DNA of 64,000 nt from Ruditapes philippinarum (lineage: Eukaryota), in assembly GCF_026571515.1 (NCBI RefSeq), contig NW_026863670.1:1-64000 (forward strand). The letters are read 5' to 3'. Position 1 is the first letter of the stretch; each line of letters begins with the position of its first letter. This document shows positions 3,101 through 62,908 of this stretch, piece by piece. The translations under genes and the position numbers were made by a program. The notes beneath the pieces were generated by a model. The model saw only the letters and a list, made by a program, of their open reading frames with translations, ran no database searches and had not been told where the DNA came from.

Positions 3101-4430
3101 GTAAATAATTAAAGGTAAGAGTGGTTTCCTTTGTTTTTTTAAAGGAGGTTTACTCGATCTAACTTAGTTATGAAAGGTGAGAGTAATTTCTCTTTGTATT
3201 ATTCGGGGAGTTTTACTCTATCTGGGCTTATTTATAAAGGTAAGAGTGATTTCCCTTTGTTTTTCAGGGGATGTAAACTCTAACTGGATTAATAATTTAA
3301 GGTAAGAGTGATTCCCTTTGTTTACTTCAGTGGAGGTTACTGCAATCAGGATTAATAATTTAGGTTAGAGTTGTTTCCCTTTGTTTTCTTCAGGGGAAGT
3401 TACTCTATCTGACTTAATCATTAAAGGTAAGAGTGATTTCCCTTTGTTTTCTTCAGGGGGAGGTAACTCTATCTGGATGAATAATTCAAGGTAAGAGTGA
3501 TTCCCTTTATTTTTTTCCTTCAAGGGAGGTAACTCTATATGACTTAATAATGAAAGGTAAAGAGTGATTTCCCTTTGTTTTTCTGCAGGGAGGTAGCTCC
3601 ATCTGGATAATATTTAAGGTTAGAGTGGTTTCCTTTTATTTTTTTCAGGAGAGGTTACTCTATCTGGCTTATTTAATGAATGATGAGAGTAATTTCCCTT
3701 TGTATTATCAGGGCAGGTTACTCTATCTTGCTTATTTATGAAAGGTAAAAGTAATTTCCTTGTTTCATTCAGGGTCGGTTAATCTATCTGACTTAGAAAA
3801 TGAGAGGTAAAAGTGATTTCTTTGTTTTCTTAAGGGAAGGTTACTCTATTTGCTTATTTATGATAAGTAAGAGTGACTTCCTTTTTTTTTTCAGGGGAGG
3901 TTACTGTATCTGAATTTATGAATTAAGGTTAAAGTGATTTCCCTTTTTCTTCAAGGTAGGTTACTCAGGTCTGACTTAATTATGAAAGGTAAGAGTTAAT
4001 TCCCTTTGTTTTCTTCAGGGGAGTAGCTCTATTTGAATAAATAATTCAAGGGTAAGAGTGAGTTCCCTTATTTTTCTTCAGGGGGTAACCTATATCTTAA
4101 TAATGAAAGGTAAGTGTTTTCCTTCGTTTTCTTCAGGGGAGGTTACTCTATCTGGGACATTAATGAAAATAGAGTGATTTCCCTTTGCTGTCCTCATGGG
4201 AGATTACTCTTTTCTGGATTTATAATTTAAGGTTAGAGTGATTTCCCTTTTATTTCAGGGGAGATGACTCCATCTGACTTGATAATGAAATGTAAGAGTG
4301 AATTCCCTTTGCTTACTCACTCCTTTTGCAGATAATACGCTATCAGATAGACTTAATAATGAAGTATAAGATTGTTTACCGGTCCCTAACACAATTTCTA
4401 GTTTTCAGGGGAGATTACTCTGTTTGACAA
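115..4430. repeat. Satellite DNA, ~61-bp monomer with ~1.43-kb higher-order repeat; interrupted by ~430 bp of unrelated sequence at ~871-1301
   Basis: Monomer consensus is approximately AAGGTAAGAGTGATTTCCCTTTGTTTTCTTCAGGGGAGGTTACTCTATCTGGCTTATTAATGA. Diagnostic variants recur at ~1.43-kb spacing: GGTTGGAATCATTATGG at 1492 and 2927, GGGACATTAATGAAAATAG at 2730 and 4154. Confidence 0.95.
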
Positions 4431-49500: not shown

Positions 49501-50238
49501 TGACATACGTACATGCGGAAATTTGGCATAGCGAATCTTGTTTGTACTATGAGTGCGTGTCAATAAAAGCTTTTTCGGTGCACCTTCCGCATTAATATTT
49601 TTTCTGTCATCTGAATATTTTTTACAAATGAGACTCGCCATGACAAAACCAACATAGTGCGTGGAACCAGACCAACCTGTGCATCTGCGCAGTCTGATCA
49701 GCTATAACGTCTTTTAAACTTTGAATGCGTTATAATTCGTTGAATACTTGTTACAAAATAAAAATATTTCTGTCCTTTATATCGCTAGTTTTAGGGTGTT
49801 TTGAAAACTACTTTTTGATGTTATGATTATAGGGAAGATATTGAATGTCAGCAATGTATTTCCTGATCTGCGTTCAATACAAAAAGGACACAGAATCCAG
49901 TTTTTTTCTTAGCTGGCCGTACAGCAAAGAATGAATCAAAACTGATAAAAAAGATCTAAGTTTGTTTAAACAGGACTATTATTACTTGTACTTGTTTAAT
50001 ACTGCCGGATTCTATCATGACAAACATGCCTAGTAAACGATGGTATTAATTTGAACTGATAACAAATAAATCACAACCTCAAACTGAGATCTACAATCCA
50101 AATGTTTTGTAGTTATTCAACGCAAGCAACTTTTATTTCATTTATTGAAAGAGTCAAAATTTGGAAATATGTCTGAAAACTTCTGTAAATAGTTGCACTT
50201 TTATTGAAATTCTATAGTGAAGTATAACATATTATAAT

Positions 50239-50368
50239 NNNNNNNNNNNNNNNNNNNNNNNNNNNNNNNNNNNNNNNNNNNNNNNNNNNNNNNNNNNNNN
50301 NNNNNNNNNNNNNNNNNNNNNNNNNNNNNNNNNNNNNNNNNNNNNNNNNNNNNNNNNNNNNNNNNNNN
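50239..50368. other. Assembly gap (130 N)
   Basis: Run of N. Confidence 1.
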
Positions 50369-50423
50369 AAAAGTCACATATAAAAAAAAAAAAAACACAG
50401 TCCATGAGTTAACTTATTATATT

Positions 50424-50462
50424 ATTTGCCAACCGGTTTCTCTTATGATCATCAGGGCAAAT
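50424..50462 (-). ncRNA. Minimal type I hammerhead ribozyme (Penelope-like-element type), minus-strand copy
   Basis: Reverse complement reads ATTTGCC CTGATGA TC-ATAA-GA GAAA CCGG T T GGCAAAT. Confidence 0.8.
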
Positions 50463-50463
50463 C

Positions 50464-50502
50464 ATTTGCCCTGATGATCATAAGAGAAACCGGTTGGCAA
50501 AT
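50464..50502 (+). ncRNA. Minimal type I hammerhead ribozyme (Penelope-like-element type), plus-strand copy
   Basis: Stem I ATTTGCC/GGCAAAT (7 bp). Core CTGATGA at 50471-50477. Stem II is 2 bp (TC-ATAA-GA). GAAA at 50486-50489. Palindromic stem III ACCGGT. Cleavage triplet GUU, with the cut predicted after 50495. Confidence 0.8.
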
Positions 50503-50538
50503 AATTAAATAAGTTAACTCATGGACTGTGTTTTTTTG

Positions 50539-50542
<4 letters not shown>

Positions 50543-50625
<83 letters not shown>
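50543..50625. repeat. (TA)n microsatellite
   Basis: About 41 TA units. Confidence 1.
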
Positions 50626-50628
<3 letters not shown>

Positions 50629-51696
50629 ATATAAGAGTATTTAAACAATCAAGCAAATGCTAAAGTATGTAGAAGAATATCATTGATTGAATGTGTCGAA
50701 ATAACTAACACGTGCCAACTTCAAACTTCGTGTACATTAAATACATTCATGATTGACATAAAAAAGAGATTTTTTTGCAATCGAATCGTAGCCCTAATGA
50801 GTTTTCATTTTCATAAATAATACAATAATTCGTTGTCACAGTATATAAATAATGCTTTTTCAAAAAATACGGACACAAGAATATAGTGATTTAAAATATA
50901 CACCACTGTACTTAAATAGTTTTTATTTGTTTGGGTCGTAAGACCAAACAAATAATGGTAGCGAAATTTCAGAGCCTAATGCTGTTAATTGCAAATGCCT
51001 AAAATAGTCCACTTTTTTGAGGCGGTTACTTCCCTTTATATGTACACTAACGCCGAAAATATCAGGGAAGATCAATGCGTAAAGATTGTCAAATAACAGG
51101 CGCATTAATTTTCAGGCAAAGTAGTCCCCGAATGGTCGAAGATTTCAAATATTGTTTCATTCTTTATAGATATACATGCTTACAGTAAGCCCCATGATTA
51201 TTTACACCTGTGTTTAGCGTCGAAATAATAAGTTACAAACCCTAATTTAGAATAACATGGTTTTCTTCAGACCGTAATTTAGAATAACATGGTTTTCTTC
51301 AGACCGTAAACATATTATTTATTTGTGTATATTTTGGAAATAAATGTTTTTTAAATATTTACACAAATTATCTGTCAATTTTTTTTATTTAGAATAACCA
51401 TATAATGGATTAAATACTAAAATATTGATGCCACGAATTTGAATATATGTTGGGATAAATTGAATTTTTATATGCAAGGCTTGAAATAAAATTGTGATTA
51501 TTTCTCCTCCCGGTGCCTACCCACAACAGTCACTGCTTCTCATTAATAAAAATTGTACAAAAAGAACATATGTTTCTCATACAATCATTTTTTTTTTACA
51601 ATCTGGGAAGAATATTGAATAAGTCTTTGAAATGTCTATTTATATATAACAAAATCTATACCCTACCCAAGCTGGTGCAGGAGGGGATGCAAAAAT

Positions 51697-60685: not shown

Positions 60686-62908
60686 TTTTAAAAGAGTCCG
60701 AATAAAATCAAGTGATTCTAAATTTAGAATTTCCATTGCATTTCGGGTTTTCAAATCAGCACAGGCTGAATAAAATCAATTCATTCTAAATTTAGAATTT
60801 CCATTGCATTTCGGGTTAGGGAATTTCGAGGTATTTTGTTCAGGGTAAACCTGTTGTTTAAAATTGAACTAAATGATTTAGCAAAAATCTTCTCGCCCAA
60901 ACAGTCCAACATGTAGAAACTATTTATTCAACAGATTTATTTGTGTAGTATTCGGTAATCGACATAGCTAAAAATAGCATTTTCATTGATTAACATCATA
61001 TTCATCCGCGTAATTTGTGAGTGTGCATTTATTGACAATTCTATAAGCCAACGCTACTTTCAAAGTTTGAATGTGTAGTAATTTGTTGGACACTTGTAAC
61101 AAAAAGTGTTCTTTCTTTTAAATTGCTGGTTTTTAGTGAGAACTAATTTGCGTTGTTAGGTCTGTTAGGAAATTTTGTGTTAGACCGTGGATGTTAGCTA
61201 TGTATATACTGATCTGCGATCAGAAAATACAAAATTGACACAGAATCTAGTTTATCTCAGCTGGTCGTACAGCAAAGTATCTAAACTGAAAAACAGGTCT
61301 ATTATTAGTTGTATTTGTTTAATACCGCCGGATTCTATGTTGGTAACCATTTCATGACTAAAATGCCTAGTAAACTATGATGTTAATTTGAACACATATC
61401 TTCAAAATGAGATCTACAATGTAAAAGCTTAATAGTCATAAACTGTTGTTTTTCAACGCAAGAAACTCTTATTTCCTTTGCAATGTTCCATTACAAACTG
61501 TTAAAATTTTATGCCTCGGAAACTTAGTCCACTTTTTTCCTTCTCGTAATTTATTAAGAAATAAACCATTCGGAACACCTCACCTCTTACAAATACCTAT
61601 GTAGCTGTTCAAAATTTGACCGAAATAGTCGAAATATGGAAATAGAACTGAAAGCTTCATTACATAGTTGCACTTTTATTGAAATTCAATAGTGAAGTAT
61701 AACATATTATAATAACAAATCAATTACTGTGACATATAGAAATATAAATTAAATATAAAAATATCTAAACAATCAAGCAAACGCTGAAGTATGTAGAAGA
61801 ATATCATTGATTAAATGTGTCGAAATAATTAACACTTGCCAACTTCAATACTTCATGTACATTTAAAACATTCATTGTTTTTATATTAAAAGGAAATTTA
61901 TTGCAATCGAATCGTATCCCGAATGAGTTATCAAATTTTAAAACAAAGAGTATTGCCTAGTTTAGTGTAAAAAACACGATGGCTTTTGGAAATAAGTTCG
62001 CTCCAATATTTTCGTACGTTTAAAACTACGCTTTTAATTGTATTCTTCTATTCTGAAATATTGAACCATTTTCATAAACATAATGTAATAATTTGTTGTC
62101 AAAGTATTTAAAAAAGCTCTTTCAAATATATGGACACAAGAAAACAGTGATTTAAAATATACACCAGTGTACGTAAATAGTTTTTGTTAATATAATTATT
62201 CAAACTTCACCGACAAGACGTATAAAACAATGGGGGGAAAACCTGTCAGTAGGGAAGCCTAAATGCTCATTATTTTCATTATTTTGCATTATGTTATATC
62301 GGTGATACGTAATGCCAAGTAAAACACATATTTTAAAAATGTCATTTTTCGTCTTGTACTATTGAAAACGAGGAATGTCGAGTTTTATCATGCAAACGTT
62401 GAATTGAACAGAGACCGTTTACATTACATTATCACAGTTTTGGCACAGATGAATCATGAAATTATTTAAAACGCAAATTATATCTGATAGATAGGCTACA
62501 TATACCAACTCAACAAGTAGTTACATACAATGGTGTGAAAAAAGCCAATGATCGTAAATATTCGACAATATTTTCGTTACTTTCCGTGTCCCAATATTAT
62601 CAATTAAGCGTCTATGTGATAAGAAGCCTGTGATCAATCAACACGTGAGTGACGACGTTACAACTATACAAGGTACTAAAGGACGGTATATCTTTATATA
62701 TATTAAAAAATCATAAACAATATCTTCTTAAAGAAAATAGTAATGCGCATTCTGACACAGTCTCGTAAAAACTTAATTGCACAAACATTTCAATAAATAA
62801 CTGCATACATATACAATGTAATCAACTATGCATACATCTAATCTACTATACCCTTTTCATAGTTCATTATTATTATGTTTCCATAAACAAACAAGTTCAC
62901 ATAAAAAG

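What the first reader, a model, noticed from the sequence alone, without database searches (positions are those of the whole stretch)
50383..50543. Back-to-back twin hammerhead ribozymes in a ~160-bp palindrome inserted at a TA site
Seen in sequence: a near-perfect inverted repeat centred on C50463. Each arm carries an identical complete hammerhead: 7-bp stem I, CUGAUGA, 2-bp stem II, GAAA, palindromic stem III ACCGGU and a GUU cleavage site. The two point outward on opposite strands, each followed by a U-rich tail that runs into TA. The paralogous segment (~61725-61760) lacks both the palindrome and the (TA)n, so this is an insertion. Established: minimal type I hammerheads with a palindromic stem III that cleave as dimers are typical of the pseudo-LTRs of Penelope-like retroelements, which often insert with inverted ends. 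Inference: this is either an extreme inverted PLE truncation or a tiny non-autonomous ambisense ribozyme element that targets or expands (TA)n. A read-through transcript would form a ~80-bp dsRNA hairpin that competes with the ribozyme fold, a possible switch between self-cleavage and small-RNA production.
Basis: partly seen in the sequence, partly recalled or inferred. Interest (0 to 1): 0.85.

Follow-up and report, generated by a model that had tools for sequence, protein, structure and literature searches.

The report
Twin truncated Penelope retroelement ends
The 160-bp palindrome is real, but it is an ordinary by-product of a young Penelope-like retrotransposon: two extremely shortened copies of the element's hammerhead-bearing 3' end, joined head to head in a TA repeat.

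Summary
Arms 50383-50462 and 50464-50543 are 96% complementary. Each carries CUGAUGA, GAAA, a palindromic ACCGGU helix III, a 7-bp stem I and a GUU site.

The arm is the last ~86-118 nt of a young 3.72-kb retroelement. There are 101 exact copies of the 39-nt motif in this 1.4-Gb genome. [quoted passage not shown]

About 19 of ~45 sampled insertions are head-to-head pairs. Their inner distances run from 1 nt (this locus) to ~3 kb. The window therefore holds the extreme of a continuum, not a discrete ribozyme element.

A 32-nt tail on one arm only, TA-repeat flanks and hammerheads on opposite strands are all published PLE traits.

The hammerhead is atypical. Helix II is vestigial (2 bp, U-A at 10.1-11.1) and no Rfam model scores it. 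Even so, stem I covaries across sister families.

A read-through transcript would be a hairpin of about -118 kcal/mol, so no cleavage switch is plausible.

The left border lies in the masked stretch, not at 50383. Reads could not be checked. First readers of this scan noted similar twins elsewhere in this genome.

The parts
50239..50368 (.). Masked run of N, not examined. The left arm's tail and the left insertion junction lie in here.
   Evidence: The tool-fetched locus L001 carries letters here; they were not read or used.
50369..50382 (-). Outer part of the left arm: the element's TATAT (inner RT start region, unit ~3687-3691) and the first 9 nt of the 32-nt tail (GTGACTTTT on the minus strand).
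   Evidence: aligns to unit 3700-3686 of the reference copy.
50383..50462 (-). Left arm: a 5'-truncated PLE 3' end (unit 3606 onward), the tail-bearing and shorter arm.
50424..50462 (-). Minimal type-I hammerhead motif, minus strand. Predicted cut after 50431.
50463..50463 (+). Central C. It matches unit position 3605 of the right arm only, so the right arm is 1 nt deeper. The junction has no overlap and no filler.
50464..50502 (+). Minimal type-I hammerhead motif, plus strand. Predicted cut after 50495.
50464..50543 (+). Right arm: a 5'-truncated PLE 3' end that stops at the inner start site (unit ~3691), without the tail.
50543..50625 (.). (TA)~41 microsatellite abutting the tail-less arm. 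It is absent from the paralogous segment.
   Evidence: TA repeats flank nearly all sampled copies.

Best explanation
The locus is a dead-on-arrival insertion of a young canonical (C-terminal GIY-YIG) Penelope-like retrotransposon. It consists of two copies of only the last ~86-118 nt of the element, joined head to head.

Inferred mechanism, following published PLE biochemistry:
- The element's RNP cuts both strands of an AT-rich or TA target.
- Each 3'-OH primes reverse transcription. One starts at an inner site (unit ~3691, no tail) and the other at an outer site (unit 3723, giving the 32-nt tail).
- Both cDNAs passed through the hammerhead and stopped at the base of a stable 10-bp GC hairpin just upstream of it.
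- The two cDNA ends were then joined, or one self-primed, producing the palindrome.

The hammerhead motifs are passengers from the parent element's 3' UTR. At this locus they face outward on opposite strands and have no sense partner in cis, so they are very unlikely to cleave. Any read-through RNA would be a long hairpin.

Shown: family membership, the continuum of inverted pairs, the one-sided tail, the 5'-end hot spot, the TA flanks and the energetics. Inferred: the order of events.
For: - Palindrome and motif.
- Copy number: at least 287 arm candidates and 101 exact 39-nt motifs.
[quoted passage not shown] ORF2 has more than 1,250 homologues with RVT_1 plus GIY-YIG on 3-4-kb contigs.
- Continuum: the window arms align to unit 3605/3606-3691/3700+. 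Head-to-head pairs have inner distances of 1, 5, 10, 21, 35, 59, 102, 124, 611 ... 3034 nt.
- Tail rule: in 12 of 12 clean pairs the tail-less arm is the deeper one, and the window pair fits as a 13th.
- 5'-end hot spot: 21 of 59 arm 5' ends fall at unit 3596-3607, next to a -16.8 kcal/mol hairpin.
- TA repeats flank nearly all copies.
- Literature: inverted 5'-truncated copies, one-sided 30-40-bp tail, (TA)n targets and hammerheads in pLTRs (PMC8557442). Both strands cleaved and extended, and two RT start sites that define the tail (PMC11167929). Head-to-head palindromic junctions read as self-priming (PMC3846280). Dual hammerheads on opposite strands 100-700 bp apart (PMC4209133).
Against: - No read-level confirmation.
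- The left junction and any target-site duplication cannot be seen.
- A 1-nt centre cannot arise by simple hairpin snap-back, so the joining step is unresolved.
Confidence: 0.9

Rival explanations
1. A discrete, tiny non-autonomous 'ambisense twin-ribozyme' element that is itself copied and inserted into TA repeats.
For: Four loci have junctions of 30 nt or less between outward-facing hammerheads. Mini copies of ~86-122 nt are common.
Against: All four centres differ: C, GTGAC, GTGACGTCAC, and a 21-nt asymmetric centre. Inner distances form a continuum up to 3 kb. The outer ends follow the same tail/no-tail rule as long pairs. Each is explained as an independent truncation at the hairpin hot spot.
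Confidence: 0.03
2. An assembly fold-back artefact next to a gap, with only one arm in the real genome.
For: The palindrome abuts a run of N. Published work notes that PLE inverted structures trouble assemblies (PMC8557442). Reads could not be checked.
Against: The arms differ at 3 positions. The outer ends are asymmetric in the family-typical way, tail against no tail. At least 18 other loci show the same architecture away from gaps.
Confidence: 0.04
3. A functional host or element-derived hairpin locus. The ~80-bp dsRNA from read-through transcription feeds small-RNA silencing of the PLE family, with the ribozyme irrelevant.
For: Predicted hairpin of -117.6 kcal/mol. In rotifers, small-RNA profiles switch polarity across inverted PLE halves (PMC3846280).
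Against: There is no expression or small-RNA data here. This would be a side effect of any inverted repeat, and nothing indicates selection on this locus, which is absent from the paralogous segment.
Confidence: 0.03

Closest known systems
Canonical EN+ Penelope-like elements (Penelope/Poseidon, Neptune, Nematis) with inverted 5'-truncated copies and a one-sided 30-40-bp tail (PMC8557442; PMC3846280; PMC11167929)
   Same: RT plus C-terminal GIY-YIG, tandem units, head-to-head inverted truncated copies, a 32-nt tail on one arm only, TA-rich targets, a hammerhead in the terminal repeat region, and ORF1 separated by a frameshift.
   Different: Both arms here are cut down to the bare 3' end (80-118 nt), so nothing but the hammerhead region remains. 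The clade was not assigned by phylogeny.
Minimal dimeric PLE hammerheads (min-HHR; Cervera and de la Pena 2014, PMC4209133; Lunse et al. 2017 as cited in PMC6765202)
   Same: Type I topology, conserved CUGAUGA/GAAA core, no helix III loop, palindromic 15.2-16.2, and location in PLE terminal regions. Dual motifs on opposite strands were reported.
   Different: The published metazoan min-HHRs have a helix II of 6-8 bp with G10.1-C11.1. This one has a 2-bp helix II with U10.1-A11.1, and sister families have only a 4-6-nt linker. Stem I is longer (7 bp against 4-5).
Animal non-LTR retrozymes (PMC7229834; bioRxiv 10.64898/2026.07.22.740005)
   Same: Short non-coding hammerhead-bearing sequences derived from, and dependent on, PLEs.
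   Different: Retrozymes are direct tandem repeats that give circular RNAs cut at the hammerhead site. This locus is an inverted pair, and its arm ends are not at the cleavage site.
L1 twin priming and inversion
   Same: Both target strands prime cDNA synthesis, giving inverted segments joined by microhomology or filler.
   Different: In L1 the second primer anneals internally on the same RNA, giving an inversion of one copy. Here both arms carry the element's 3' end.

Membership tests
Penelope-like element (EN+, C-terminal GIY-YIG) | RT and GIY-YIG endonuclease in one ORF, with the nuclease C-terminal | tested here: met
   In the reference unit's ORF2, RVT_1 lies at residues 260-435 and GIY-YIG at about 680-769. 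Homologues carry both domains. This applies to the family, not to the window locus, which holds no coding sequence.
Penelope-like element (EN+, C-terminal GIY-YIG) | Tandem or partial-tandem copies (pLTR) and inverted 5'-truncated copies | tested here: met
   Tandem 3.73-kb units at C346, C7323 and C8798. About 19 head-to-head pairs.
Penelope-like element (EN+, C-terminal GIY-YIG) | [quoted passage not shown] | tested here: met
   A 32-nt tail (unit 3692-3723) on exactly one arm in 12 of 12 clean pairs. In the window, its first 9 nt are visible at 50369-50377.
Penelope-like element (EN+, C-terminal GIY-YIG) | Placement within a named clade by RT phylogeny | not tested
   No tree was built. The ORF1 frameshift, TA targets and a Cys-rich stretch before GIY-YIG hint at Neptune-like, but that is only a lead.
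Hammerhead ribozyme, type I, PLE min-HHR | Catalytic core C3-A9, G12-A14, A15.1-U16.1 and H17 | tested here: met
   CUGAUGA ... GAAA ... U then U17. Across the genome, position 17 is H in 181 matches and G in 3.
Hammerhead ribozyme, type I, PLE min-HHR | Stem I supported by covariation | tested here: met
   The inner 4 pairs show compensatory changes. Covariation score 0.396 against 0.261 in shuffles (0 of 500 reach it), and highest among slid registers. Few independent lineages.
Hammerhead ribozyme, type I, PLE min-HHR | Helix II with a conserved G10.1-C11.1 pair (6-8 bp in published PLE min-HHRs) | tested here: not met
   Two base pairs, U-A then C-G, with an AUAA loop. The dimer energy is the same with or without it. 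Sister families have 4-6-nt linkers.
Hammerhead ribozyme, type I, PLE min-HHR | Palindromic helix III allowing a double-hammerhead dimer | tested here: met
   ACCGGU. The active-like dimer is -17.7 kcal/mol, but an inactive dimer with an 8-bp AACCGGUU helix is -21.5.
Hammerhead ribozyme, type I, PLE min-HHR | Match to a curated Rfam hammerhead model | tested here: not met
   No hammerhead family at gathering score or at E<=10. This is expected for a motif with no helix III loop.
Hammerhead ribozyme, type I, PLE min-HHR | Self-cleavage | not testable with these tools
   Needs in vitro transcription of monomer and dimer constructs, with and without the element's protein.
Non-LTR retrozyme | Direct tandem repeats, one hammerhead per unit, unit ends at the cleavage site | tested here: not met
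   The arms are inverted, and their 5' ends lie at unit 3605/3606, not at the cut site 3637/3638.
MITE with TA target-site duplication | Terminal inverted repeats of a DNA transposon, recurring as the same unit | tested here: not met
   The arms are the PLE 3' UTR at 96-100% identity. The centres differ between loci.

The most novel reading that the evidence does not exclude
Two details may go beyond the literature I could read.

(1) In head-to-head PLE pairs, the arm that owns the central single-copy segment always starts at the inner RT start site (no tail). The shorter arm always starts at the outer site (with the 32-nt tail). This held in 12 of 12 clean pairs, with the window as a 13th. 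It would be a genomic footprint of an ordered, two-strand reverse transcription by one (possibly dimeric) RNP, and in vitro work did not see it.

(2) Several PLE lineages in this genome keep a hammerhead core and a covarying stem I while helix II is reduced to a 4-8-nt linker. That would make them natural 'minizyme'-like hammerheads that may depend on protein or on intermolecular pairing.
Probability: 0.4. Interest if true: 0.45.

Novelty: new member of a known kind. Interest (0 to 1): 0.22.

Why it matters
For this locus, very little: it is transposon debris and should be annotated as a PLE fragment, not as a ribozyme gene or a new element class.

For the family, the many young, nearly identical insertions give a clean natural record of PLE integration. 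It shows two start sites, a one-sided tail, twin arms and a stall point at a hairpin. This record could be compared with the recent in vitro system. The vestigial helix II bears on the open question of what PLE hammerheads are for.

Tried and rejected
- Rfam at gathering score on the whole window and at E<=10 on 50369-50560 gave no hammerhead family. The only hits were spurious microRNA-like matches to the long hairpin.
- A single-arm fold showed no significant stability (z = 0.03).
No other route was tried.
The census therefore rests on about 45 sites.
- Locus L001, fetched by the tool, holds letters where the window is masked. Those letters were not read, printed or used. One BLAST alignment ran about 23 nt into that stretch before I noticed. 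I rely only on the visible 50369-50382.
- My first hand-written dimer structure was invalid because of crossing pairs. It was redone as a nested domain-swapped dimer.
- Lunse et al. 2017 is not held and is cited only through PMC6765202.
- The idea that the helix II linkers are self-complementary (maxizyme-like) is not supported. Self-pairing is 4/4 for UAUA and UGUA and 6/8 for the main family, but 0/6 for UAUUGU and 2/5 for UUAUA, and the families are related.
- The idea that arms begin at the hammerhead cut site fits one locus at most (C3234, ambiguous because of a 7-nt microhomology). It is not the rule.

Full report
**1. The observation**

The window holds an inverted repeat with 80-nt arms at 50383-50462 and 50464-50543. 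The arms are 96% complementary, with a single C (50463) between them.

Each arm begins, at the centre, with the same 39-nt motif:
- a 7-nt stem I strand
- CUGAUGA
- an 8-nt helix II segment (UC-AUAA-GA)
- GAAA
- CCGG, then UU
- the 7-nt stem I partner

The motif lies at 50464-50502 on the plus strand and 50424-50462 on the minus strand. The core pattern occurs twice in the window, against 0.00 expected from shuffles. The predicted cut sites are after 50495 (+) and after 50431 (-).

Rfam reports no hammerhead family, either at gathering score on the whole window or at E<=10 on the 192-nt region. That is expected for a motif whose helix III has no loop. It does mean the call rests on the descriptor, not on a curated model.

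**2. What the arm is**

The 80-nt arm is a high-copy, nearly identical repeat in the window's own 1.4-Gb assembly:
- at least 287 candidates, with the 40 scored ones mostly 99-100% identical
- 101 exact copies of the 39-nt motif

On contig C346, three same-strand copies lie 3.73 kb apart. I took one natural unit there (3,723 nt) as the reference, without building a consensus. It encodes:
- ORF1 of about 410-440 aa with no Pfam match
- ORF2 of 771 aa, with RVT_1 at residues 260-435 and a GIY-YIG domain at the C-terminus

ORF2 has more than 1,250 homologues carrying RVT_1 plus GIY-YIG, mostly on 3-4-kb contigs. An RT followed by a C-terminal GIY-YIG nuclease is the hallmark of canonical endonuclease-bearing Penelope-like elements (PMC8557442).

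In the unit, the hammerhead occupies positions 3606-3644. That is about 75 nt after the ORF2 stop and about 80-118 nt before the 3' end.

**3. The palindrome is the extreme of a continuum**

I aligned about 45 sampled insertion sites to the reference unit. About 19 are head-to-head pairs, minus arm then plus arm.

The distances between the two hammerheads are 1 nt (this window), 5, 10, 21, 35, 59, 102, 124, 611, 627, 1211, 1530, 1691, 1764, 2871 and 3034 nt.

The four shortest junctions all have different centres, so they are independent events and not copies of one mobile palindrome.

Exact base-by-base extension shows 0-3 nt of overlap or 5-38 nt of filler at the junctions. In the window the junction is flush, and the central C belongs to the right arm.

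**4. Ends and flanks**

Arms end either at unit ~3691, where the element's own TATAT merges into a TA repeat, or at 3723, which adds a 32-nt tail. In 12 of 12 clean pairs, exactly one arm has the tail, and it is always the shorter arm.

Two apparent exceptions are not clean two-ended pairs. C404 has only a 28-nt fragment as its second arm. In C6898 the 3723 end is an internal tandem junction.

The window fits the rule. The right arm ends at ~3691 and runs into (TA)~41 at 50543-50625. The left arm continues past TATAT (50378-50382) into the first 9 nt of the tail (50369-50377) and then into the masked run 50239-50368.

Nearly all sampled copies are flanked by TA repeats at the 3' end, and often at the 5' end as well.

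The paralogous segment has about 51 nt of TA-poor sequence (61714-61764) where the window has the masked run, the element and the (TA)n. The flanks are 81-82% identical overall and nearly identical next to the junction. The element is therefore an insertion, and the long TA tract either came with it or expanded afterwards.

**5. Why the arms stop just before the hammerhead**

Of 59 arm 5' ends, 21 fall at unit 3596-3607. Immediately upstream lies a 10-bp GC-rich hairpin (unit ~3577-3602, -16.8 kcal/mol).

I infer that reverse transcriptase, coming from the 3' end, copies through the hammerhead and tends to stop at the base of this hairpin. The A/T-rich bases there also offer microhomology to the TA target.

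One caveat applies. The sample was chosen for an intact hammerhead, so arm ends lying 3' of position 3606 are under-represented.

**6. Fit to published PLE biology**

- Craig et al. list heavy 5' truncation, an inverted 5'-truncated copy abutting the element, a 30-40-bp tail at one end, hammerheads in the pLTRs, (TA)n as a preferred target, and ORF1 separated by a frameshift (PMC8557442).
- Arkhipova et al. describe a 31-bp tail on one of the inverted pLTRs, and head-to-head repeats with palindromic junctions that they interpret as self-priming (PMC3846280).
- Frangieh et al. showed in vitro that a purified PLE protein cleaves and extends both target strands. It prefers AT-rich DNA and starts reverse transcription at two internal sites, and the sequence between those sites is the tail. 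Hammerhead cleavage was protein-assisted and was not needed for insertion (PMC11167929).
- Cervera and de la Pena already saw dual minimal hammerheads 100-700 bp apart on opposite strands and ascribed them to truncated PLEs (PMC4209133).

The window locus is the same thing, with both arms cut to the minimum.

**7. The hammerhead itself**

The core, the 7-bp stem I and the palindromic helix III match the PLE minimal hammerhead. Helix II does not:
- It has 2 bp, with U-A at 10.1-11.1. Published metazoan PLE motifs have 6-8 bp and a conserved G-C at that position.
- It contributes nothing to the dimer energy: -17.7 kcal/mol with it and -17.9 without.
- An inactive dimer that pairs A14 with U17 is more stable, at -21.5 kcal/mol.

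Other families in the genome share CUGAUGA...GAAACCGGU but have only 4-6 nt in place of helix II.

Position 17 is A, C or U in 181 matches and G in 3.

Stem I shows compensatory changes between families. The covariation score is 0.396 against 0.261 +/- 0.044 in shuffles, with 0 of 500 reaching it, and it is higher than every slid register.

The motif is therefore maintained in active lineages. Whether this variant cleaves is untested.

**8. Function at this locus**

A transcript through the locus contains one antisense and one sense hammerhead, so no dimer can form in cis.

The visible palindrome folds into a hairpin of -117.6 kcal/mol. The best fold that keeps the hammerhead is -57.5 kcal/mol. 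A switch between cleavage and dsRNA is therefore not plausible.

Small-RNA production from the hairpin is possible, as for any inverted repeat, but it was not tested.

**9. Artefact question**

Three points argue against a fold-back artefact:
- the arms differ at 3 positions
- the outer ends are asymmetric in the family-typical way
- many other loci share the architecture

**10. Handling of masked sequence**

Locus L001, returned by the genome search, contains letters where the window reads N. I did not read or use them. One BLAST alignment had already run about 23 nt into that stretch before I noticed, and no conclusion rests on it.

**11. Earlier notes**

First readers of this scan flagged similar structures elsewhere in this genome. 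These notes are unchecked. They fit the census but add no independent evidence.

**Verdict**

It is an ordinary, already described kind of transposon debris. Two details at family level may be worth a specialist's look: the tail/depth rule and the vestigial helix II.

Noticed in passing
L031 (G000:C346:111800-121700), minus strand; reference-unit positions 1195-1258: ORF1 and ORF2 overlap by 64 nt in different frames. The overlap contains T-TTT-TTG (unit 1222-1228), a candidate -1 slippery heptamer, and is identical in all four copies held. ORF1 separated by a frameshift is a listed PLE feature (PMC8557442, Fig. 1 legend).
   Followed up: partly
Proteins P0001, P0009, P0020, P0060, P0063, P0073: Close homologues of the PLE ORF2 are deposited as proteins of clam gill-symbiont MAGs (Candidatus Thiodiazotropha, Solemya velum symbiont) on 3-4-kb contigs. 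This is most simply bivalve host retroelement DNA binned into bacterial MAGs.
   Followed up: no
L035-L049 (for example G000:C971:23412-23433, C2739:97537-97557, C3794:165508-165530): Sister hammerhead families share the same core and helix III, but helix II is reduced to TTATA, TATA, TGTA or TATTGT. They have related 3' regions, and stem I covaries with the main family.
   Followed up: partly
Reference-unit positions ~3577-3602 (L031 minus strand, just 5' of the hammerhead): A 10-bp GC-rich hairpin (-16.8 kcal/mol) lies immediately upstream of the hammerhead. 5' truncation points of both solo and paired copies pile up at its 3' base.
   Followed up: partly
window 49925-50238 and 50571-50927 versus 61403-61713 and 61698-62052: The sequence around the insertion has a paralogue 11 kb downstream at 81-82% identity. 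It is either an old local duplication or two copies of another repeat family, and it was not classified.
   Followed up: no
G000:C7109:16431-16865 (L015): Two mini copies (118-121 nt, hammerhead plus tail) lie in direct orientation 317 nt apart, each followed by its own TA tract. The 197 nt between them was not identified.
   Followed up: no
G000:C575:317270-317624 (L054): Two short copies lie in convergent (3' end to 3' end) orientation about 170 nt apart, the opposite of the usual head-to-head arrangement.
   Followed up: no
window 50239-50368 / locus L001: The genome-search tool returned a locus (L001) that carries letters where the window is masked with N. The letters were left unread, and only the fact is reported.
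   Followed up: no
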